64,000 bases of DNA, taken from Pristiophorus japonicus. Taxonomy: Eukaryota. The notes below the pieces were generated by a model. The model searched no databases. It saw nothing but the letters and a program-made list of their open reading frames with translations, and was not told the origin of the DNA. The stretch's first letter is position 1, and each line of letters begins with the position of its first letter. The position numbers were made by a program, and so were the translations under genes. Where the stretch lies: the NCBI RefSeq assembly GCF_044704955.1, contig NW_027252889.1, forward strand, positions 496,001 through 560,000, read 5' to 3'. Shown one piece after another: positions 1 through 63,649 of the stretch.

Positions 1-2763
1 CTCAACATCCAAGGGTATTCAACATTTAGGAAGGATAGACAGAAAGGAAAAGGAGGCGGGGTAACGTTGCTGGTTAAAGAGGAAATTACTGCAATTGTAA
101 GGAAAGACATTAGCTTGGATGATGTGGAATCGGTATGGGCGGAGCTACGGAATACCAAGGGGCAGAAAACGCTAGTGGGAGTTGTGTACAGACCTCCAAA
201 CAGTAGTAGTGATGTTGGGGAGGGCATCAAACAGGAAATTAGGGGTGCATGCAATAAAGGTGCAGCAGTTATCATGCGTGACTTTAATATGCACATAGAT
301 TGGGCTAAGCAAACTGGAAACAATACGGTGAAGGAGAATTTCCTGGAGTGCAGAAGGAATGGTTTTCTAGACCAATATGTCGAGGAACCAACTAGTGGGG
401 AGGCCATCTTAGACTGGGTGTTGTGTAATTAGAGAGGATTAATTAGCAATCTCGTTGTGCGAGGCCCTTTGGGGAAGAGTGACCATAACATGGTGGAATT
501 CTACATTAGGATGGAGAATGAAACAGTTAATTCAGAGACCATGGTCCAGAACTTAAAGAAGGGTAACTTTGAAGGTATGAGGCGTGAATTGGCTAGGATA
601 GATTGGCGAATGATACTAAAGGGGTTGACAGTGGATGGGCAATGGCAGACATTTAGAGACCACATGGATGAACTACAACAATTGTACATCCCTGTCTGGT
701 GAAAAAATAAAAAAGGGAAGGTGGCTCAACCGTGGCTATCAAGGGAAATCAGGGATAGTATTAAAGCCAAGGAAGTGGCATACAAATTGACCAGAAATAG
801 CAGCGACCCCGGGGACTGGGAGAAATTTAGAACTCAGCAGAGGAGGACAAAGGGTTTGATTAGGGCAGGGAAAATGGAGTACGAGAAGAAGCTTGCAGGG
901 AACATTAAAATGGACTGCAAAAGCTTCTATAGATATGTAAAGAGAAAAAGGTTAGGAAAGACAAACGCAGGTCCTCTGCAGTCAGAATCAGGGGAAGTCA
1001 TAACTGGGAACAAAGAAATGGCGGACCAATTGAACAAGTACTTGGGTTCGGTATTCACTAAGGAGGACACAAACAACCTTCCGGATATAAAAGAGGTCAG
1101 AGAGTCTCATAAGAAGGAGGAACTGAGGGAAATCCTAATTAGTCAGGAAATTGTGTTAGGGAAACTGATGGGATTGAAGGCCGATAAATCCCCAGGGCCT
1201 GATGATCTGCATCCCAGAATACTTAAGGAGGTGGCCTTGGAAATAGTGGATGCATTGAGTCATTTTCCAACATTCTATAGATTCTGGATCAGTTCCTATG
1301 GAGTGGAGGGTAGCCAATGTAACCCCACTTTTTAAAAAAGGAGGGAAGAGAGAAAACAGGGAATTATAGACTGGTCAGCCTGACATCGGTAGTGGGGAAT
1401 TTGTTGGAATCAATTATTAAGGATGTCATAGCAGCGCATTTGGAAAGAGGTGACATGATAGGTCCAAGTCAGCATGGATTTGTGAAAGGGAAATCATGCT
1501 TGACAAATCTTCTGGAATTTTTTGAGGATGTTTCCAGTAGAGTGGACAACTAGTTAATGTGGTGTATTTGGACTTTCAGAAGGCTTTCGAGAAAGTCCCA
1601 CACAAGAGATTAATGTGCAAAGTTAAAGCACATGGGATTGGGGGTAGTGTGCTGACATGGATTGAGAACTGGTTGTCAGACAGGAAGCAAAGAGTAGGAG
1701 TAAATGGGTACTTTTCAGAATGGCAGGCAGTGACTAGTGGGGTACCGCAAGGTTCTGTGCTGGGGCCCCAGCTGTTTACATTGTACATTAATGATTTAGA
1801 CAAGGGGATTAAATGTAGTATCTCCAAATTTGCGGATGACACTAAGTTGGGTGGCAGTGTGAGCTGCGAGGAGGATGCTATGAGACTGCAGAGTGACTTG
1901 GATAGGTTAGGTAAGCGGGCAAATGCATGGCAGATGAAGTATAAAGTGGATAAATGTGAGGTTATCCACTTTGGTGGTAAAAACAGAGAGACAGACTATT
2001 ATTTGAATGGTGACAGATTAGGAAAAGGGGAGGTGCAACGAGACCTGGGTGTCATGGTACATCAGTCATTAAAGGCTGGCATGCAGGTACAGCAGGCGGT
2101 TAAGAAAGCAAATGGCATGTTGGCCTTCATAGCGAGGGGATTTGAGTACAGGGGCAGGGAGGTATTGCTACAGTTATACAGGGCCTTGGTGAGGCCACAC
2201 CTGGAGTATTGTGCACAGTTTTGGTCTCCTAACTTGAGGAAGGACATTCTTGCTATTGAGGGAGTGCAGCGAAGATTCACCAGACTGATTCCTGGGATGG
2301 CGGGACTGACATATCAAGAAAGACTGGATCAACTGGGCTTGTATTCACTGGAGGTCAGAAGAATGAGAGAGGATCTCGTAGAAATATTGAAAATTCTGAC
2401 GGGTTTAAGACAGGTTAGATGCAGGAAGAATGTTCCCAAGAATGTTGGGGAAGTCCAGAACCAGGGGTCACAGTCTAAGCATAAGGGGTAAGCCATTTAG
2501 GACCGAGATGAGGAGAAACTTCTTCACCCAGGGAGTGGTGAACCTGTGGAATTCTCTACCACAGGAAGTTGTTGAGGCCAATTCACTGAATATATTCAAA
2601 AAGGAGTTAGATGTAGTCCTTACTACTAGGGGGATCAAGGGGTATGGCGAGAAAGAAGGAATGGGGTACTGAAGTTGTATGTTCAGCCATGAACTCATTG
2701 AATGGCGCTGCATGCTCGAAGGGCTGAATGGCCTACTCCTGCACCTATTTTCTATGTTTCTAT
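1..2763 (+). mobile_element. CR1 LINE, ORF2 (endonuclease + RT), decayed, 5' part outside window
   Basis: ORFs 67-2672 carry VGVVYRPP, DFN, KSPGPD, YLDFQKAF, GVPQGSVLGP, KFADDTK, RPHLEYC with stops and frameshifts; ends in ttctatgtttcta tail. Confidence 0.95.
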
Positions 2764-6998: not shown

Positions 6999-7254
6999 TT
7001 ACTGCACTTTTCCCTCAACATGTATTTTCCCGTTGAATCCTGTGTGTGAGGTTTTGTCCCACCATGTGCTCACTTAAACAAATTAAAAACAAATGGAGTT
7101 TGTCCCAGATTTCACCCTCCATTCTGTACTTAGAATTTCCACTCAGTGTTGTTACTGTAAAAGTGACAACGTTGTACAACATTTACTTACACATGAGATG
7201 TTGGTATTGTAACATTATTAGATATCAAACCAATATAATGTAGAATATACTTAC

Positions 7255-7608
7255 TGGTTATGTTCAGCCGGGTTCCATTTCCATAGATTGTTCCCCAAAT
7301 ACCACAGATATAGACAGCGCTGTCTCTGCGCTCCACGCCTCTGATGGTCAGAATGCAGCTGTTACTGGCAACATCTCTGGAAAGCTGAAACCGCTCAGAG
7401 ACACCTTGTGATCGGTAAACCCAGCCATCTACATAATGAGTAAATATTTTGTGTTTCCTATCCTGTGAGAGGTACCAGTGTACAGTATATTTATCCACAC
7501 GGTGATTCACATTGCTGCTCTCCAGGGTACACCCAAACTGCACCGTCCCACCCTCGGGCACCGTCACAACTTCTGGGGACTGGATAAGAACCGGACTTGC
7601 CTTTCGAC
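7255..7608 (-). CDS. Gene A exon 2: germline-joined V-J Ig domain (IgSF V-set, PRARP/VJC1-like)
   Basis: Acceptor ttatttactattcacAG and donor A|GTAAGT, both phase 1; 354 nt open; (G)RKASPVLIQSP...FGC...HWY...SERFQLSRD...LTI...DSAVYIC-GIWGTI-YGNGTRLNIT; no RSS. Confidence 0.93.
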
Positions 7609-26483: not shown

Positions 26484-26535
26484 CCACTGCGACACAGAGG
26501 GTCAGAGTCACGGCTGTGAGCCTCGGGCCAAACAT
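26484..26535 (-). CDS. Gene A exon 1: signal-peptide (leader) exon
   Basis: ATG...MFGPRLTAVTLTLCVAV-G|GTAAGT, 52 nt, phase 1 matching the VJ exon; homologous to the gene B leader (shared ACTCTGACCCTCTG...GTGG|GTA). Confidence 0.8.
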
Positions 26536-44323: not shown

Positions 44324-44375
44324 ATGATCTGTAAAATGTTCCTGGTTTTCACTCTGACCCTCTGCTCTTCTGTGG
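44324..44375 (+). CDS. Gene B exon 1: signal-peptide (leader) exon
   Basis: ATG...MICKMFLVFTLTLCSSV-G|GTAGGT, 52 nt, phase 1; same length and TLTLCxxVG end as the gene A leader. Confidence 0.8.
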
Positions 44376-51623: not shown

Positions 51624-54600
51624 AACATAAGAACGTAAGAAATAGGAGCAGGAATAGGCCATACGGCCCCTCGAGCCTGCTCCGCCATTTGATACGATCA
51701 TAGCTGATCCGATCATGGACTCAGGTCCACTTCCCTGCCCACTCCCCATAACCCCTTATTCCCTTGTCGGTTAAGAAACTGTCTATCTCTGTTTTAAATT
51801 TAATCAGCTCCCACAGCTCTCTGAGGCAGCAAATTCCACAGATTTACTACCCTCAGAGAAGAAATTCCTCCTCATGGGCAGCCCCTTATTCTAAGATTAT
51901 ACCCCCTAGTTCTAGTCGCCCCTATCAGTGGAAACATCCTCTCTGCATCCACCTTGTCAAGCCCCCTCATAATCTTACACGTTTCGATAAGATCACCTCT
52001 CATTCTTCTGAATTCCAATGAGTAGAGGCCCAATCTACTCAACCTTTCCTCATAAGTCAACCCGCTCATCTCCGGAATCAACCTCGTGAACTGCCTGCAA
52101 AGCAAGTATATCTTTTCTTAAATATGGAAGGGCTTAAACCTGGGCCTCATAATCTTGTATGTTTCGATAAGATCACCTCTCATTCTTCTGAATTACAATG
52201 AGTAGAAGCCCAATCTACTCAACCTTTCATAGAAATAATAGGTGCAAGAGCAGGCCATTCGGCCCTTCGAGCCTGCACCACCATTCAATATGATCATAGC
52301 TGATCATGCAACTTCAGTACCCACATCCTGCTTTCTCTCCATACCTCTAATCCCTTTAGCCATAAGGGCCACATCTAACTCCCTTTTGAATGTATCTAAT
52401 GAACTGGACTCAACAACTTTCTGTGGTAGAGAATTCCATAGGTTCACAATTCTCTGGGTGAAAAAGTTTCTCATCTCAGCCCTATATGGCTTACCCCTTA
52501 TCCTTCGACTGTGAGCCCAGGTTCTGGACTTCCCCAACATCGGGAACATTCTTCCTGCATCATCAGAATTTTATATGCTTCTATGGGATCCCCTTTCATT
52601 CTTCTAAATTCCAGTGAATATAAGCCTTGTCGATCCAGTCTTTCTTCATATGTCAGTCCTGCCATCCCAGGGATCTGCCTGATGAACCTTTGCTGCACTC
52701 CCTCAATAGCAAGAATGTCCTTCCTCAGATTAGGTGACAAAATCTGCACACAATACTCAAGGCGTGGTCTCACCAAGGCCCTGTACAACTGCAGCAAGAC
52801 CTCCCTGCCCCTATACTCAAATCCTCTCGCTATGGAGGCCAACATGCCATTTGCTTTCTTAACTGCCTGCTGTACGTGCATGCCTACTTTCAATGACTGA
52901 TGTACCATGACACCCAGATCTCGTTGCATCTCCCATTTTACTGATTGGTCACTATTCAGATAATAATCTGTCTTCCTGTTTTTGCCACCAAAGTGGATAA
53001 CCTCACACTTATCCACATTATACTGCATCTGCCATGCATCTGCCCACTCACCTAACCTATCCAAGTCACCCTGCAGCCTCTTAGCATCCTCCTCACAGCT
53101 CACACTGCCACCCAGCTTAGTGTCATCTGCAAACTTGGAGATATTACATTCAATTCCATCGTCTAAATTATTAATATATATTGTAAATAGCTGGTGTCCC
53201 AGGACAGAACCTTGCGGTACCCCACTAGTTACTGCCTGCCATTCTGAAAAGGACCCGTTTATTCCTTCTCTTTGCTTTCTGTCTGCCAACCAGTTCTCTA
53301 TCCACATCAATATATTACCCCCAATCCCATGTGCCTTAATTTTGCACATTAATCTCTTGTGTGGGACCTTGTCAAAAGCCTTTTGAAAGTCCAAATACAC
53401 CACATCCACTGGTTCTCCCTTATCCACTCTACTAGTTACATCCTTAAAAAATGAAGAAAGATTTGTTCAGCATGATTTCCCTTTCATAAATCCATGCTGA
53501 CTTGGACCGATCCTGTCACTGCTTTCCAAATGTGCTGCTATTACATCTTTAATAATCGATTCCAGCATTTTCCCCACTACCGATGTCAGGCTAACTGGTC
53601 TATAATTCCCTGTTTTCTCTCTCACTCTTTTCTTAAAAAGTGGGGTTAAATTAGCTACGCTCCAATCCATAGGAACTGATCCAGAGTCCATGGAATGTTG
53701 GAAAATGATCACCAATGCATCTACTATTTCTAGCGCCACTTCCTTAAGTACTCTGGGATGAAGACGATCAGGCCCTGGGGATTTATCAGCCTTTAGTCCC
53801 TTCAATTTCCCCAATACCATTTCCCGACTAATAAGGATTTCCCCCAATTCCTCCTTCTCGCGAGACCCTCGGTCCCCTCGTATTTTCGAGAGATTATTTG
53901 TGTCTTTCTTAGTGAAGACGGAACCAACGTATTTTGTTCAATTGGTCTGCCATTTCCTTGTTCCCTATTATGAATTCACCTGATTCTGAATGCAAGGGAC
54001 CTACATTAGTCTTCACTAATCTTTTTCTCTTCACATATCTATAGAAGCTTTTGCAGTCAGTTTTTATGTTCCCTGCAAGCTTACTCTTATACTCTCTTTC
54101 CCCTCTCCTAATTAAACCCTTAGTCTTCCTCTGCTGAATTTTAAATTTCTCCCAGTCCTCAGGTTTGCTGCTTTTTCTGGCCAATTTATATGCCTCTTCC
54201 TTGGATTTAACACTATCTCTAATTTCCCTCATTAGCCACGGTTGAGCCACCTTCCCCGTTTTATTTTTACGCCACACAGGGATGTACAATTGTTGTAGTT
54301 CATCCATGTGATCTTTAATTGTTTGCCATTGCCTATCCACCATCAACCATTTAAGTATCATTCGCCAGTCTATCCTAGCCAATTCACATCTCATACCATC
54401 GAAGTTACCTTTCTTTAATTTCAGGACTCGAGTCTCTGAATTAACTCTGTAACTCTCCATCTTAATGAATAATTCTACCATATTATGGTCACTCTTCCCC
54501 AAGGGGCCTTACACGACAAGATTGCTAATTAATCCTCTCTCATTACACAAGACCCAATCTAGGATGGCCTGCTCTCTCGTTGGTTCCTCGACATATTGGT

Positions 54601-56795: not shown

Positions 56796-59433
56796 TGTGT
56801 ATCCATTAACACCATGTTGGCGCTGCGGGGGCAGTCATAGAGCTCATCAATGGCAATTCAAGCCGTATGTGTGCAAGGACTGTGGAACAACGGGGCACCT
56901 CCTGTGAATGTGCAAATGACCTGTGACTCACCATGTGGCAGAGTCAGGAGAGGACGACCGATCCAGTGAGGATCACGCTGAACGAGGAGAGGAAACGCAA
57001 CCTGAGGGTGAAGAGGAAGTATACGGGATACACATCTTCAACACCAAAAGCCCTCCGATGATGTTAAAAGTTGAACTCAATGACACTCGAGTCTCCATGG
57101 AATGGGGGGGCGAGTCAATCAATTATGAGCCAGAAAGCATTCGAGAGGCTTGGGGCAACAAAACACAACGACCCAAGCTGATCCAGATTCAGGCAAAGCT
57201 GTGCACCTACACCAAGGAACTGATACCAGTTATTGGTATTGCGGACATAAGACTATCCCATGAGGGAGCGGTGCACGATTTAGCACTTTGGATTGTTCCA
57301 GGTGATGGGCCAACTCTTGGTAGGTGGATGGGGAAGATTCGATGGAACTGGGAAGACCTCTGCGTACTTTCTCCCGCAATCGATGTCTCCCTTGCTCAAA
57401 GACTGACCAAAGCCCCACCTTCAGCTGAACCAGGCATCAAAGTGCAGATCCATTTGCAGATTCCAGAGGCACAGGACGCTCATCACGACCATGAGGAGAT
57501 GAAGATCAACCGAGCAGCAGTACAGGCACGATACCCACCACCCGAAGCCGATGATCTTTTCGCGACGATGGAAGAGGCTCCAGGTCGACCAAGCAGAGTG
57601 GGACTCCGGCCGAAACGATCCGAAAGCGTCCTTCCGACGCCAGAGGCAAAATCCCTGGGGAGGAAGATCACGGCAGTCGGCATCACGGACACGGACGAGA
57701 GTATGTCCAGACCACGGGACGGGGGAGCGTCCAGACCACGGGACGGGAGAGCGTCCAGACCACGGGACGTCGCCGCTATGAAACAGAGACATGTGTTGCC
57801 CAGCAAGGAAGACAACTGGGTTTGGGGCAAAGGTAAAGGGGCGGCTGCTGAGAAGGCCAGGAACCCACTATGTTCCAATAAGTTGTTTGCACTGTGTAAC
57901 CCATGTGAGCGTTCTTTCGCGGCCAATGATGTACTATCATATGGGGTCGGGGGTATCTTACAACAAGCCAAAGTAGCGGGCGAACACCAACTGGTCATAT
58001 ATGTATCTGACAAAGTATTTATAACAAGTGAGGTGTTACCACACGGGGTCGGGCGTGTTGTGCAGCAAGCCAAAGTAGCAGGCGAGCCCCAACCTGTTGT
58101 ACATGTATCCAATAAGTTGACCAAGGCTATAGCCTGGGCTCACGGGACAAAAGAGATGTACCAAAGAGTGTCCCAATATGTGCTCGAGTCAGACAAGCTG
58201 CCTATCCCACAGTTTTGGGAGAGCAAAGGCACCATTAAGGATGTGTTGTTTCGAGAATGTCTAACACTGTAACATGATCCGCCACGGACCAGGCACTGAG
58301 AATGGCGCCAATGCCCTCAGTTAGCTACAGTTGCCCAACATCGGAGTGGAAACACCGCAGTCTGCAGACCTACTCGTTGTTGTGGAAGTGCTAGAAAGTG
58401 AGGGGTCAACTGTAACGGCCACCCAGTTTAGGACCTGGACCAGTCAGGATCCCACATTACCGCCCGCCAATGGTGAACCGCTAGATGGGATGTTGCAGCT
58501 TATCCGTCGCAAAGACAAAAGGCTCATCCCATCAGAGTGCCTCCTATGGGGCAACCCTGCAACATTGCAAAGAAAGGCAGGGAGGCTACACACAGTCGGT
58601 GGTCCGGGGCCTCCATATCATGGCCCAGGATCCACAGGGACCACGCGGCCTCCCGCCACTACTGAAAGTCTCAAGGCCATATCGACCATCCTGGGCTTGC
58701 CAGACCTTAGGGTCAGCGACAATAGTCCGGAGCAGGTAGCCCAAATCACAAAGCCAAGCACCACACGTGTCACGGTGGACTCCCTACAGACCCGGCTATT
58801 CCGGGTGCTACGCAGTCACCAGACAGAAGCACTCAGAACCGAGCCTTCCATATAGTATCAGCAGAGAATGCACCATGATCAGAATAAATGATGTAGACCA
58901 TGTTCAGAGCCCCAGATAGGCCGCTAGCACTGTATTAGCCAAAGAGGGGAATGGAGTGTGTGTGATGAAAATGGAGCATTTGATTGTGAAACCATGTACT
59001 GGGCAAACGCAGAAAGCATTTGGACCAGACCAAACTGCGAACTACAGATAACCAGGAACCACTGTGAAAGACCTGGCCCCCAGCGATCCACTAACACAAT
59101 CGACCTCACCGTCAACCACGAGAATGAACCCACCATGCCAAGACTTCAACTCAGGCAATCGACCCGGGGACGCAGGGCGCCAGATCGCCTCAACTTGTAC
59201 ATAAGACTTTGGAGGGGGCGGGGGGGGAAGTGATGTTATATATGTATGTAAACATCACCGATATGTAACACTTGCCACTAGGGGGCACACCTGTGGGAGA
59301 CCCAAGGGTCACCTGTGCACCCTGGGCAAGCAGGTATAAAAGGTGACTCACCATGCTGCTTCTCCACTCTGGAGTCTGAATCAAGAGACCAAGGTCACAA
59401 CAGTTTGAGCTTGGATTTATTCTGAACATAACA
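56796..59433 (+). mobile_element. Gypsy/Ty3 LTR retrotransposon remnant, 5' LTR missing
   Basis: gag knuckle PCWRCGGSH...CKDCGTTGH, degenerate protease/RT/RNase H/IN pieces, RRAPDRLNL end, polypurine tract, 3' LTR. Confidence 0.8.
59234..59433 (+). repeat. Gypsy 3' LTR (200 bp)
   Basis: tgttat...ataaca inverted termini after a G-rich PPT; TATAAAA at 59335; CTCF-like gccactagggggcac at 59274-59288. Confidence 0.82.
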
Positions 59434-59478
59434 GTGATTATATCTTGTGGTTCCTCATCAGTTATTTACTATTCACAG

Positions 59479-59832
59479 GTCTAAAGGCAAGTCCGGTTCT
59501 TATCCAGTCCCCAGAAGTTGTGACGGTGCCCGAGGGTGGGACGGTGCAGTTTCGGTGTACCCTGGAGAGCAGCAATGTGAATGACCGTGTGGATAAATAT
59601 ACTGTACACTGGTACCTCTCACAGGATAGGAAACACATAATATTTTCTCATTATGTAGGTGGCAGGATTTACCGATCACGCGGTTTCTCTGAGCGGTTTC
59701 AGCTTTCCAGAGATGTTGCCAGTAACAGCTACATTCTGACCATCAGAGGCGTGGAGCGCAGAGACAGCGCGGTCTATATCTGTGGTATTTGGGGATCAAT
59801 CTATGGAAAAGGAACCCGGCTGAATGTAACCA
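59479..59832 (+). CDS. Gene B exon 2: germline-joined V-J Ig domain (IgSF V-set, PRARP/VJC1-like)
   Basis: Acceptor ttatttactattcacAG and donor A|GTAAGT, phase 1; 354 nt open; (G)LKASPVLIQSP...FRC...HWY...DSAVYIC-GIWGSI-YGKGTRLNVT; no RSS. Confidence 0.93.
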
Positions 59833-60254
59833 GTAAGTACTTTCTATATTATATTGTTTTTCGACCTAATGTTACCGTACAAATATCTTGTTTAAATGTT
59901 ATACAAACTGTTCCTTTTACAGTAACACTGAGTTTTAACTACAGAATGGAGGGTAAAATCTGGGCCAAACTCAATTTGTTTTTAACAGAACAAATAATTG
60001 TGAGCACATGGTGGGACAAAATCTCACACACAGGATTCAACGGTAAAATACATGTTGAGGGAAAAGTGCAGTAATAGGAATAATTTAGAGAGCTCGAAAC
60101 CATGAAATCGACCCTGATATTAACCCTCTGCCCCCCCCCCACGCTGTGCGGGAGAGCATCGGAGGGGTGGGTGTTAGTGTTAATTATGGGAAAATTGTCC
60201 CCAACATGCCCAAGTCCTCCAGATAGCGCACTCTCTCCTTTCCCTTCCCGATCA

Positions 60255-60447
60255 TGGCCTATCTCACCTTCCTCACCCAATCAGGCCTCTCTGTCTCTCT
60301 CTCCCCCACCCGATCGTGACCTCTCTCTCTCCCCCACCCGATCGTGACCTCTCTCTCTCTCTCTCTCTCTCCCCCCCACCCGATCGTGACCTCTCTCTCT
60401 CCCTCACCCAATCGTGACCTCTCTCTCTCTCCCCCAGCCCAATCATG

Positions 60448-60480
<33 letters not shown>

Positions 60481-60524
60481 CCACCCGATCGTGGCCTCTC
60501 TCTCTCTCCCCCAGCCCAATCATG

Positions 60525-60559
<35 letters not shown>

Positions 60560-60602
60560 CCGTACGATCGTGGCCTCTATCTCTCTCTCCCACCCGATCA
60601 TG

Positions 60603-60641
<39 letters not shown>

Positions 60642-61320
60642 CGCCCGATCGTGGCCTTTCTCTCTCTCTCTCCCCGCCCGATCATGGCCACTCTCTCTCT
60701 CCCCGCCCGATCATGGCCTCTCTCTCTCTCCCTGCCCGATCATGGCCTCTCTCTCTCTCTCCCCGCCCAATCGTGGCCTTTCTCTCTCTCCCCGCCCGAT
60801 CATGGCCTCTCTCTCTCTCTCTCTCCCCGCCCAATCGTGGCCTTTCTCTCTCTCCCCGCCCGATCGTGGCCTCTCTCTCTNNNNNNNNNNNNNNNNNNNN
60901 NNNNNNNNNNNNNNNNNNNNNNNNNNNNNNNNNNNNNNNNNNNNNNNNNNNNNNNNNNNNNNNNNNNNNNNNNNNNNNNNNNNNNNNNNNNNNNNNNNNN
61001 NNNNNNNNNNNNNNNNNNNNNNNNNNNNNNNNNNNNNNNNNNNNNCCTCTCTCTCTCTCNNNNNNNNNNNNNNNNNNNNNNNNNNNNNNNNNNNNNNNNN
61101 NNNNNNNNNNNNNNNNNNNNNNNNNNNNNNNNNNNNNNNNNNNNNNNNNNNNNNNNNNNNNNNNNNNNNNNNNNNNNNNNNNNNNNNNNNNNNNNNNNNN
61201 NNNNNNNNNNNNNNNNNNNNNNNNNNNNNNNNNNNNNNNNNNTCTCTCCCCCCGCCGATCGTATTCAGTCCCTCTGTCTCTTTCTCCCCCACCCCTCCAG
61301 ATTGTGGCCTCTCTCTCTCT
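60255..61320. repeat. compound (CT)n / cccgatcgtggcct repeat with two N-gaps
   Basis: Directly visible; gaps at 60881-61045 and 61060-61241. Confidence 0.92.
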
Positions 61321-63649
61321 AATCTATCTAGGCATAGGGCCAGCAAGTAAATAAAGTAAACAGCTTGCATTTATATAGTGCTTGTCATGATCTCAGGATA
61401 TCCCAAAGCGGTTTACAGCCAATGAAGTACTTTTGACGTGTAGTCACTGTTGTAATGTCGGAAACACAGCAGCCAAGTTGTGCACAGCAAGCTCCCAGTT
61501 TTAGTTGCTGCAGAAATGATGTTATCCAGTTGCTCAGACTCCAAACATCACATTAAGAAATTGATTCATTGGATTAATGGGTGATTTTTATACTAAAATC
61601 AATAAGCCAAAATATTCAATGAACTTCCTTTTTTACCAATATTTCTGCAGCAGGACTTGTTGTCATTAAAGAGTTCCAGTTAATGCACCGTCTAAATGTA
61701 GGTGTTTCATACAATACTCTCAGGATTTTCTCCATCAAATTAACCCTTTGTCTGCTGCTCCTGTTGTATTCCTTCTGTAATATTATAATACATGTGAATG
61801 AGATATAAAACCACCCCAACTATTCACAACATCTATCCATAATCCATTAACTATCATAAATCTGTGTGCACTTCTTGGCTGCACAAATTCACTTTCATGT
61901 TTTTGTCACACTTTTGGGGAGGGAGATTTTAAGTTTCCTGACTGGGCGGAAATCAGACGGGAGTGGATCAGCCTCCTATTTAAACCCACCCTCTACTGGC
62001 TCACTGGTCTTTACCGTCTCCCCCGCTCCCTCTCTCCCAACTCTCAGTCTCTCCTCCCTTTCTGCTCTCTGTCTCCTCGACTCTCTCTGTGCACTGCCTC
62101 CTCTACTCTATCCTCCGCTCCCTCTCTACCCCTCAGCGCCCTCTCTCTGCTCCCAATACGGGTACAGTAGTGGAGTGTCGTGGTTATGTTACTAGACGAG
62201 TAATTGAGAGTCCCGCACTAATAATCCAGAGAACGTGGGTTCAAATCTCACCCTGGCAGTGAGAGAATTTCAAATCATATTAAAAATAAACACATAGAAA
62301 AAAAACCTGGTAGTGAAAACCTGTTCCCAATAAATCCCTCATTCTCCCACCATCAACATCCCGGGGCTCACTACTGACCACGATCACTACTGGACCAGCC
62401 ATTATCCACAGTGTGGCTGCAGGAGCAACAGAACCGGTTTATATTTCTGTCCTACGCTGGTATTTATTGTGGAATTCCCACCCACACCTCTTCCACTGAA
62501 TTTATACTGAAGTGATTTCCAAAATAAGACAGTGATGGTCACCATCTTTAGTGAAGCCGACACCCACCCAACCCTTGGTGAACTCAGGAGCCCGCTTTAG
62601 GGACAAGTACATCTCTTGGCAGCAGCGCAGTAAAGTTTGCGCCCAGGAACAGTTTGCATCTCAGTCAGCAAATTTCAGCAGCTGGGCCCCGAGTGTGGGG
62701 CGGAGAGCTAATGGAGGCGTTGCCCACCTCTTGTAGGGCACTTGGCTGGCTGAGAATGCGAAAATCCCGAGCTGAACAGCCGGCCTAGGAGCACTGTGAG
62801 AGAGGCCTGGGGGAAAAAATACTGAAAAAAACCCCACCAAAACATTGCCAATAAATAACTCACGTCACCACAACATAAATCACAAAACAAATTCAATAAA
62901 AACCAACCACACTTACCCGAGGTGGACATGACTTACCTCACTGCAGCCGCTACAGGTCGGACTGCCCGCTTTCACAGGCGGTCCCAGCACGGCGCTCTAC
63001 TGAGTGCTACAGATCTGGCGGGAGCCATAAACAACCAGGGGCGTTGCACACCGGCTCGCCTCTTCCAGGCGGTAATGCTCCACACCCTGAAACCCCCGGC
63101 GAGGCACTGGAACCTGGCTGTCCAACCGGAGAGCTTACCGTCACCAATTCCGCACCTCCAGGGCGAAAACAGAGGCGACAAGCCGAAAATCCAGCCCAAT
63201 GTTTTTACAGTGCATTACAACCCTCCCCTACAAGTTCAGCACAAGCCTGACAGTCTCCAGCACCAGGAAGGCTATCCCAACTTGCAGTGATTCACCGGTT
63301 TGTACTCAGAATAACGAATCCAAGATGGCAGGCTCAACAGCTCAGTCACAGTAACAGCCGAGACAGCCACAAAGTTGGCAGCATTAAAACCCGCGAGGTG
63401 CTACGGTGCAACCGAGCACGAGTCAACAGCACCTCCCACAGCGAGCCGGAGGGTGAGTGATGTGAGGGGGTTGGGGTCTCCAGTTCCAGGCCCAGTGTTG
63501 GCACTGCTGGAATACCACAAACTGAACGTTTCCAGGTTTGCAAATTTCACTCAAATTGCAAGTATTAAAGGAACATTTTCAAATATTGGATCTATGAGTG
63601 CCCTTCCTTCTATGTCCATCTCCTGGCTCGCCTCACACATTCTGTCCTT

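What the first reader, a model, noticed from the sequence alone, without database searches (positions are those of the whole stretch)
59479..60085. V exons are nearly identical while leaders and introns are old: exon-restricted gene conversion between inverted copies
Seen by manual alignment: 17 of 354 nt differ between the VJ exons, with no indels, and only 2-3 of these changes are synonymous. The ~250 nt of intron after the donors (59833-60085 vs 7254-6999) shows many substitutions and several indels. Upstream similarity stops ~45 nt before the acceptor. The leaders share little more than TLTLCxxVG, and the promoters are unalignable by eye. Silent sites being much closer than adjacent intron is not explained by purifying selection on protein. 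Inference: an ancient duplication whose ligand-binding exon is repeatedly homogenised, as in activating/inhibitory paired receptors.
Basis: partly seen in the sequence, partly recalled or inferred. Interest (0 to 1): 0.8.

Follow-up and report, generated by a model that had tools for sequence, protein, structure and literature searches.

The report
Shark receptor V exons kept alike
Two oppositely oriented sawshark immune-receptor genes share a nearly identical antibody-like binding exon inside otherwise unrelated DNA; this fits the known habit of paired inhibitory and activating receptor families of copying binding-domain sequence between genes, seen here in a shark family I found in no paper.

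Summary
The two VJ exons (59479-59832 + and 7608-7255 -) differ at 17 of 354 nt with no indels. Only 2-3 changes are silent. They sit in a 620-bp island of homology, and the rest of the window shares only dispersed repeats.

- The island is not limited to the exon. It includes about 25-40 nt upstream and 242 nt of intron, and the last 78 nt of that intron are 97% identical.
- Silent-site divergence (3.1%) is below intron divergence (9.5%) only marginally (p 0.05-0.10).
- A and B are not each other's closest copies. Pristiophorus japonicus protein models carry at least 13 further distinct V1 exons, the nearest 5 aa from A and 8 aa from B.

At family level the predicted pattern is strong.
- V1 domains group by species, not by tail type. 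Forcing them to group by tail is rejected (AU p 8.5e-46). Both tail types, one ITIM/ITSM-like and one ITAM-like, occur in sharks and rays.
- The sawshark V1 copies are mosaics of a shared pool of variants (PHI p 0.0002-0.011).

This is most likely short-tract gene conversion or similar recombination in a paired-receptor family, a known mechanism in an undescribed family. Earlier notes of this scan report the family, and similar conversion signatures, on other DNA of this genome.

The parts
59479..59832 (+). V1 (membrane-distal VJ-type Ig V-set) exon of gene A. It is intact and starts in phase 1.
   Evidence: Acceptor and donor read directly. Pfam V-set E 9.6e-15. 88-96% identical to V1 of Pristiophorus japonicus protein models.
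7255..7608 (-). V1 exon of gene B. It is intact and carries an extra Cys at codon 84.
   Evidence: Its nearest paralogue V1 is 8-9 aa away.
59441..59478 (+). End of intron 1 shared with B (7632-7609, with a 12-nt indel). This is the 5' limit of the homology island.
   Evidence: Local alignment starts at 59455. Further upstream is no better than shuffled sequence.
59833..59996 (+). Proximal part of intron 2, homologous to B but diverged: about 13% substitutions and 12 indels. Part of it is unique to A.
   Evidence: A DNA contig covers 59811-59937 with 0 differences at single-copy-like depth 14.7.
59997..60074 (+). Distal intron block, 97% identical to B 7076-6999. This is the 3' limit of the island.
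   Evidence: 2 differences in 78. A DNA contig covers 59908-60084 at about 5 times unique depth with 1 difference. No Rfam match and no unusual fold.
44324..44375 (+). Candidate leader exon of gene A (MICKMFLVFTLTLCSSVG). Its pairing with exon A is inferred, not shown.
   Evidence: ATG, hydrophobic core and phase-1 GTAGGT donor. A 14-nt exact core is shared with the B leader. It appears in no protein model and in no listed RNA loose end.
26484..26535 (-). Leader exon of gene B (MFGPRLTAVTLTLCVAVG), the leader used across the family.
   Evidence: 100% identical to the leader of P0002, P0003, P0014 and others. RNA contigs join this leader sequence to V1-type exons (loose end at 59478).
59248..59413 (.). 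Very high-copy interspersed repeat. It ends 65 nt upstream of the acceptor of exon A.
   Evidence: Word depth about 1.5e5 against 15-400 on the exon and intron. Loose ends at 59413.
56923..58272 (+). Retroelement ORF (weak, sub-threshold RT-RNase H matches) in intron 1 of gene A.
   Evidence: Pfam RT_RNaseH_2 and RT_RNaseH, both below the curated cut-offs.

Best explanation
What the exons are. A and B are the membrane-distal V1 exons of two head-to-head members of a large Japanese sawshark family of non-rearranging receptors with tandem VJ domains. The family architecture is leader, V1, V2, sometimes V3, a transmembrane segment and a tail. The tail is either ITIM/ITSM-like (T1) or carries an ITAM-like motif plus YxN (T2).

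Why they are alike. The similarity is not left over from a recent whole-gene duplication. It comes from non-reciprocal sequence exchange among family members, that is short-tract gene conversion or equivalent ectopic recombination. This exchange has pasted V1 sequence, with tens to a few hundred nt of flanking intron, into genes whose other parts differ. The same process reshuffles a shared pool of CDR variants, on which selection for replacement changes may act.

Shown:
- the homology island and its limits;
- the mosaic pattern among sawshark V1 copies;
- the discordance between V1 and tail across species;
- the motifs in the two tail types.

Inferred:
- that the mechanism is gene conversion rather than another form of ectopic recombination;
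- that the inverted orientation of A and B argues for conversion, because unequal crossing-over between inverted copies would invert the interval between them;
- that the 44.3-kb leader belongs to gene A;
- that A and B carry opposite tails. This last point rests only on unchecked scan notes about DNA outside the window.
For: 1. The island. Homology between the two genes is confined to 59455-60074 vs 7632-6999. The 15.1-kb and 18.9-kb first introns and everything else share only dispersed repeats. The leader regions align over 32 nt only.
2. Uneven divergence within and between parts. Exon 4.8%, silent sites 3.1%, proximal intron 13%, distal intron 2.6%. Maximum-chi-square permutation p 0.038.
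3. Many copies. The retrieved sawshark protein models hold at least 13 distinct V1 sequences besides A and B. A is 5 aa from P0114, B is 8 aa from P0136, and A and B are 15 aa apart.
4. Shared variants. For 13-14 of the 15 A/B amino-acid differences, both states are also seen in other paralogues. P0136 is A-like in its first half and B-like in its second.
5. Recombination signal. 184 of 253 pairs of informative sites are incompatible. PHI p is 0.0014, 0.0002 and 0.011 for three window sizes.
6. Nucleotide-level agreement. Five of the ten variant positions seen within the exon in read contigs (59553, 59638, 59680, 59685, 59796) carry the same alternative letters as B.
7. Species tree test. V1 clusters by species or lineage with T1 and T2 mixed: Pjap 100/99, Hfra 100/98, orectolobiforms 100/99, myliobatiforms 98/97. 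Tail type needs 14 changes on the tree, the same as shuffled labels. Holding T2 together is rejected (delta lnL 379, AU p 8.5e-46). Both tail types occur in sharks and batoids.
8. Tail motifs. T2 tails carry YxxL-x7-YxxL and YENV. T1 tails carry TVYATV, xxYADI and TEYAAI.
9. Precedent. Homogenisation of ligand-binding domains by gene conversion is documented for Siglec-11/16 (PMC5701461), the CEACAM families (PMC2832619, PMC5112662) and the KLRC paired receptors (PMC3210942).
Against: - With only two DNA sequences, the silent-site vs intron contrast is marginal (p 0.05-0.10).
- The 3' limit at 60074 may be an insertion in B rather than the end of a conversion tract. A's sequence beyond 60074 is present at about 5-10 times unique depth in DNA contigs, and all 7 kb downstream of B look like transposable elements.
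- A high-copy repeat ends only 28-40 nt from the 5' limit in A, so a rearrangement breakpoint is possible there.
- The family evidence is from amino-acid sequences of automatic gene models, not DNA.
- Recurrent selected substitutions at CDR sites could add to the site incompatibility.
- No RNA contig links the 44.3-kb leader to exon A, and no contig proves that A itself is expressed.
Confidence: 0.6

Rival explanations
1. Birth-and-death plus rearrangement, with no conversion at these two loci. A and B descend from ordinary, fairly recent duplications of family genes at about 5-10% divergence. Later transposable-element insertions, deletions and a breakpoint just upstream of exon A removed the flanking homology. 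The 44.3-kb 'leader' is then a relic, or belongs to another gene, and not to A.
For: - The family is clearly expanding by recent duplication. V2, V3, the leader and the tails are 97-100% identical among paralogues.
- Exon word depth is about 5-28 times the unique depth, and A's distal intron and 3' flank are about 5 times.
- A high-copy repeat ends at 59413, and a retroelement ORF lies at 56.9-58.3 kb, directly upstream of exon A.
- B's downstream 7 kb is rich in transposable elements.
- The A-type leader is in no gene model or listed RNA contig.
Against: - No collinear match of any kind exists between about 15 kb and 19 kb of intron 1 at a sensitivity that finds 65% identity. At 5-10% divergence, stretches between the inserted elements should still align.
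- The 5' limit does not coincide with the repeat edge.
- It does not explain the mosaic sharing of variants.
- It does not explain the mixing of T1 and T2 on the V1 tree in every lineage, which needs recombination between gene types at some point.
- The roughly symmetric head-to-head layout (leader to V1 of 15.1 and 18.9 kb) suggests that the 44.3-kb leader does belong to A.
Confidence: 0.25
2. Purifying selection alone. This would be an ancient duplication in which the exon stays similar because the protein is constrained.
For: The exon has no indels, while the intron has 12.
Against: - dN (0.056) exceeds dS (0.031), so the protein is not the conserved layer.
- 97% identity in 78 nt of distal intron, and identity in the last 24 nt of intron 1, are not protein constraint.
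- Replacements cluster in CDR2: 8 of 17 differences in 48 nt, P 0.0009.
Confidence: 0.03
3. Assembly artefact. One of the two exons was placed by collapse or chimeric joining of near-identical family copies.
For: At least 15 near-identical V1 copies make mis-assembly conceivable. At 59638 the listed DNA contigs show only the alternative letter. N gaps lie 0.8 kb downstream.
Against: - DNA contigs match A exactly over 59502-59584 and 59811-59937, the latter running across the donor at single-copy-like depth. Another covers 59908-60084 with one difference.
- Both copies have intact splice sites and their own private differences and indels.
- The check is weak. The runs are kept as short contigs, probably from the same individual as the assembly, and the 59811-59937 contig has only 22 nt on the exon side.
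Confidence: 0.04

Closest known systems
Mammalian and frog paired receptors with converted ligand-binding domains: Siglec-11/16, Siglec-5/14, CEACAM1/CEACAM3, KLRC/NKG2 (PMC5701461, PMC4042635, PMC2832619, PMC5112662, PMC3210942)
   Same: Genes with opposite signalling tails keep near-identical membrane-distal Ig domains. Ectodomains cluster by species while tails cluster by type. Short-tract gene conversion is the accepted cause.
   Different: Here the domains are VJ-type (antigen-receptor-like) V domains in tandem. The family has at least 15 copies, not a pair. The distal domain is also the most variable one. The opposite tails are shown for the family but not for the two genes in the window.
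Novel immune-type receptors (NITR) of bony fish (PMC2442602)
   Same: Non-rearranging V domains with a J-like end. Large, fast-evolving clusters. Mostly ITIM-bearing, with a minority of activating forms. Extreme V diversity within species.
   Different: NITRs have one V domain, sometimes followed by an I-type domain, and their activating forms use a charged transmembrane residue. The shark proteins have 2-4 V domains and an ITAM-like motif in the tail itself. No orthology was tested here.
SIRP family (SIRP-alpha and SIRP-beta)
   Same: NCBI names several orthologues 'tyrosine-protein phosphatase non-receptor type substrate 1-like'. The N-terminal domain is a V domain with a J-like motif. From my own knowledge, the T1 tail motifs (xxYADI, TEYAAI) recall the SIRP-alpha ITIMs.
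   Different: SIRPs have a V-C1-C1 ectodomain, whereas these proteins are all V. The tail resemblance is from memory and was not tested.
UrIg / UrIg2, non-rearranging shark VJ genes (PMC12227049)
   Same: Germline VJ exon in elasmobranchs. Gene conversion among domains is reported for UrIg2.
   Different: UrIg proteins are V plus many C domains, are secreted or associated with extracellular matrix, and are single-copy or low-copy. The family here has no C domains and has signalling tails.

Membership tests
Paired receptors with a gene-converted ligand-binding domain | Two or more genes have a near-identical membrane-distal domain | tested here: met
   A and B are 95.2% identical in nt and 87% in aa. 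The other sawshark V1 copies are 5-25 aa from A and B.
Paired receptors with a gene-converted ligand-binding domain | The partners carry opposite signalling modules (ITIM against ITAM or a charged transmembrane residue) | tested here: inconclusive
   At family level, T1 tails have ITIM/ITSM-like motifs and T2 tails have YxxL-x7-YxxL plus YENV. The tails of A and B lie outside the window. Only unchecked scan notes (s1-878612, s1-878761) suggest a tyrosine-motif tail downstream of A and an ITSM tail downstream of B. Signalling was not tested.
Paired receptors with a gene-converted ligand-binding domain | Trees disagree: the binding domain groups by species and the tail groups by type | tested here: met
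   Careful ML tree of 38 V1 domains plus 3 outgroup domains. T2 monophyly is rejected (AU p 8.5e-46). Tail type needs 14 changes, the same as shuffled labels.
Paired receptors with a gene-converted ligand-binding domain | DNA-level conversion tracts: flanks older than the tract and significant fragment tests | tested here: inconclusive
   The 620-bp island and unalignable flanks are present. Silent vs intron divergence gives p 0.05-0.10 and the maximum-chi-square scan p 0.038. PHI on protein is significant.
Elasmobranch tandem-VJ receptor family (unnamed; automatic gene models only) | V-set domain with a J-like GxGTxLxV end encoded in one exon, with no recombination signal sequence | tested here: met
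   The exon is followed directly by a GTAAGT donor.
Elasmobranch tandem-VJ receptor family (unnamed; automatic gene models only) | High identity to the V1 domain, and the same leader, as annotated sawshark members | tested here: met
   88-96% identity to V1 of P0001-P0003, P0034 and P0114. B's leader is 100% identical. A's candidate leader differs.
Elasmobranch tandem-VJ receptor family (unnamed; automatic gene models only) | Further V exons, a transmembrane segment and a tyrosine-motif tail downstream in the same gene | not testable with these tools
   No V2, V3, transmembrane or tail exon lies in the window. The neighbouring DNA could not be fetched.

The most novel reading that the evidence does not exclude
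The V1 exon may act as a germline cassette. Short-tract conversion among 15 or more dispersed and inverted copies would keep recombining a limited pool of CDR variants. That would give sharks a hard-wired but combinatorially diversified repertoire of antigen-receptor-like VJ domains, displayed on both inhibitory and ITAM-bearing receptors. In effect this would be a germline counterpart of somatic Ig gene conversion, in a family no paper describes.
Probability: 0.3. Interest if true: 0.65.

Novelty: new member of a known kind. Interest (0 to 1): 0.45.

Why it matters
If confirmed with DNA of all copies, co-evolution of inhibitory and activating receptors through exchange of the binding domain would be shown in cartilaginous fish. 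Until now it is known mainly from mammals and frogs. Here it would act on domains closely resembling antibody light-chain V regions. It would also give a concrete, testable case of how a non-rearranging VJ receptor family generates and maintains binding-site diversity in the germline. That bears on ideas about what V-J domains did beside, or before, the rearranging receptors.

Tried and rejected
No DNA of paralogues or orthologues could be fetched, so GENECONV, DNA trees and per-pair dS vs intron comparisons were not possible.
All searches used the single V exon or database proteins.
- Rfam and RNA folding of the conserved distal intron block gave nothing, so an intronic RNA gene does not explain its conservation.
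- tblastn with whole family proteins found no V2, V3, transmembrane or tail exon in the window. The tails of A and B therefore stay unknown.
- A more permissive alignment upstream of 59455 found nothing above shuffled sequence. The idea that homology runs exactly to the repeat edge at 59413 is rejected.
- The test for dN greater than dS is not significant, so I do not claim positive selection from this pair alone.
- The read data could not show whether A itself is transcribed or which leader it uses. The laid RNA-like contigs come from paralogues; for example, a 1022-nt contig has 11 differences.
- Literature searches found no description of this family. UrIg/UrIg2 are different molecules.

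Full report
**What is there**

The window holds exactly two V-type exons.
- Exon A is 59479-59832 on the + strand.
- Exon B is 7608-7255 on the - strand.
- Each has a cacag acceptor and a GTAAGT donor.
- Each encodes an intact 118-residue V-set domain that ends in a J-like YGxGTRLNV motif (Pfam V-set E about 1e-14).
- The nearest solved structures are lambda-type light-chain V domains.

The two exons are 354 nt long. They differ at 17 positions and have no indels. Two differences are purely silent and one codon carries a double hit. Nei-Gojobori counts give dS 0.031 and dN 0.056. Eight of the 17 differences fall within 48 nt around CDR2 (P 0.0009). This agrees with the scan's note s1-878912.

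**Extent of the similarity**

A self-comparison of the window shows that A and B share only 59455-60074 against 7632-6999. Every other match is a dispersed repeat with no collinearity.

Upstream of the exon, 24 nt are nearly identical. After a 12-nt indel, perhaps 14 more nt align. Beyond that, nothing beats shuffled sequence.

Downstream, 242 nt of A align with 256 nt of B, with 22 substitutions in 232 ungapped columns and 12 gap events. The pattern is a mosaic:

| Segment | Differences | Divergence |
|---|---|---|
| Exon, all sites | 17 of 354 | 4.8% |
| Exon, silent sites | 2.5 of 82.7 | 3.1% (dS) |
| Proximal intron (about 160 nt) | 20 of 154 | 13% |
| Distal intron (59997-60074) | 2 of 78 | 2.6% |

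So the tract is not restricted to the exon, and "old introns" overstates the case.

The statistics are modest:
- silent sites against the whole intron: p 0.05-0.10;
- all exon sites against the intron: p 0.029;
- maximum-chi-square scan with permutation: p 0.038, with the hot segment at 59825-59885.

**Leaders**

Two phase-1 leader-like exons lie upstream on the matching strands.
- 44324-44375 (+) encodes MICKMFLVFTLTLCSSVG.
- 26535-26484 (-) encodes MFGPRLTAVTLTLCVAVG.

They share a 14-nt exact core and the donor. Otherwise their surroundings are unalignable: the local alignment score is 32 and the best shuffle scores 31.

The genes are therefore head to head, with first introns of 15.1 and 18.9 kb. 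This rough symmetry fits an old inverted pair.

The B leader is 100% identical to the leader of at least ten sawshark gene models. The A-type leader occurs in none.

**What the genes are**

A word search with the exon found Pristiophorus japonicus proteins at 88-91% identity. It also found relatives at 59-68% in many sharks and rays. A full-length search gave 109 family members, including one from a chimaera.

The domains fall into three old V types, V1, V2 and V3, each shared by sharks and batoids.

Two tail types recur in both sharks and batoids:
- T1 has KKWACFQ, TVYATV, xxYADIQF and TEYAAIK, which are ITIM/ITSM-like motifs.
- T2 has ADYENV and YMAL-x7-YSEL, which are ITAM-like and YxN motifs.

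I found no paper that describes this family. UrIg and UrIg2 are different, V-plus-C molecules. Earlier notes of this scan describe the same family on other DNA of this genome.

**A and B within the family**

Cluster members of ten sawshark representatives gave at least 13 distinct V1 sequences besides A and B.
- No retrieved protein model has a V1 identical to A or B.
- A is 5 aa from P0114, P0117 and P0130.
- B is 8 aa from P0136 and 9 aa from several others.
- A and B are 15 aa apart, so they are not each other's nearest copies.

For nearly all A/B differences, both states also occur in other paralogues. P0136 reads A-like in its first half and B-like in its second.

Of the 253 pairs of informative sites, 184 are incompatible with a tree. 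A PHI-type permutation test is significant, with p 0.0014, 0.0002 and 0.011 for three window sizes.

Mean pairwise amino-acid difference among sawshark paralogues is 13% for V1 and 3% for V2 and V3. The leader is almost invariant. V1 is therefore the variable cassette of an otherwise very uniform family.

**Cross-species test**

I built a careful ML tree of 38 V1 domains plus 3 V3-domain outgroup rows. The V1 domains came from species that have both T1 and T2 genes. V1 groups by species or lineage, with T1 and T2 mixed:

| Lineage | Support |
|---|---|
| Sawshark | 100/99 |
| Heterodontus | 100/98 |
| Orectolobiforms | 100/99 |
| Myliobatiforms | 98/97 |

Tail type needs 14 changes on the tree, the same as shuffled labels. 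Forcing the T2 genes together costs 379 log-likelihood units (AU p 8.5e-46).

Both tail types predate the split between sharks and rays. So V1 sequence has moved between gene types within each lineage. I tested it with tails, not leaders, and on proteins, not DNA.

**Reads**

Sixteen runs hold part of the stretch. I laid four of them on 58600-60200.

Expression:
- Two runs of unrecorded type cover only the exon and not the intron, so they behave like RNA.
- Their contigs differ from A at several sites, so they come from paralogues.
- One loose end at 59478 is the canonical B-type leader.
- Another, at 59479, is the end of a V exon. This shows V-to-V1 splicing, as in models P0001 and P0138.
- Neither expression of A nor use of the 44.3-kb leader is shown.

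Assembly:
- DNA contigs match A exactly over 59502-59584 and over 59811-59937, which runs across the donor at depth 14.7.
- Another covers 59908-60084 with one difference at depth 73.
- The proximal intron therefore looks unique to A, while the distal block and the next 100 nt are present in about five copies.
- There is no sign of collapse, but this is a weak assembly check.

Repeats:
- A repeat of very high copy number ends at 59413.
- A retroelement ORF lies at 56.9-58.3 kb.

**Weighing the explanations**

A recent whole-gene duplication cannot explain two long introns with no collinear remnant.

Purifying selection cannot explain dN above dS together with similar intron flanks.

Two explanations remain.
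1. Non-reciprocal exchange of a short segment around V1. This fits the island, the mosaic among paralogues and the discordance between V1 and tail.
2. Ordinary duplication followed by a rearrangement just upstream of exon A and an insertion just downstream of exon B. Nearby transposable elements, and the multi-copy depth of A's 3' flank, keep this alive.

I put the first at about 0.6 and the second at about 0.25. Because A and B are inverted, exchange between them, or with copies in either orientation, is more easily achieved by conversion than by crossing-over. This last point is inference.

**Comparison with what is known**

Homogenisation of ligand-binding domains by conversion between inhibitory and activating partners is well documented: Siglec-11/16 (PMC5701461), Siglec-5/14 (PMC4042635), the CEACAM families in mammals and Xenopus (PMC2832619, PMC5112662) and KLRC (PMC3210942). 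The mechanism is therefore known.

What is new:
- the host lineage;
- the antigen-receptor-like VJ nature of the exchanged domain;
- the size of the family.

Other notes of this scan report similar signatures elsewhere in this genome (s1-877558, s1-878806, s1-876502).

**Limits**

- The tails of A and B lie outside the window.
- Scan notes s1-878612 and s1-878761 suggest a VJ exon with a 2-base deletion, a transmembrane exon and a tyrosine-motif tail just beyond A, and VJ-VJ-TM-ITSM exons beyond B. I could not check these notes or their strands.

Noticed in passing
window 52834-52908 (-) and 2054-2125 (+): The odd N-terminus MVHQSLKVGMQVQQAVKKANG of sawshark gene models P0035, P0115 and P0135 matches copies of a reverse-transcriptase-bearing retroelement in this window at 88%. 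Those annotated first exons are therefore transposable-element-derived. They are either exonised or mis-annotated.
   Followed up: partly
window 59445-60074 (+): In copy A the reading frame of the V exon stays open through the donor for the whole shared intron segment. The homology with B ends exactly at the stop codon TAA at 60072-60074. Copy B stops much earlier, at 7187. This is probably coincidence, but a read-through secreted form was not excluded.
   Followed up: no
window 60230-61350: A CT-rich satellite lies 150 nt past the end of the homology island. Its units of about 35-70 nt end in CCCACCCGATCGTGACC. It is interrupted by two N gaps at 60881-61045 and 61060-61242.
   Followed up: no
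window 7355-7357 (-), codon 84 of exon B: B has an extra, unpaired cysteine (SNSCILT where A has SNSYILT). The same variant occurs in paralogues P0002, P0136, P0137 and P0138, so it is a shared family variant and not a private mutation.
   Followed up: partly
window 59479 (loose end in run X5): A contig joins the end of a V exon (…GGCTGAATGTAACCA) directly to the start of a V1-type exon. This shows transcripts in which V1 is not the first domain, as in models P0001 and P0138.
   Followed up: no
window 59479-59832: The 17 A/B differences are 11 transversions and 6 transitions. This is the reverse of the usual neutral bias.
   Followed up: no
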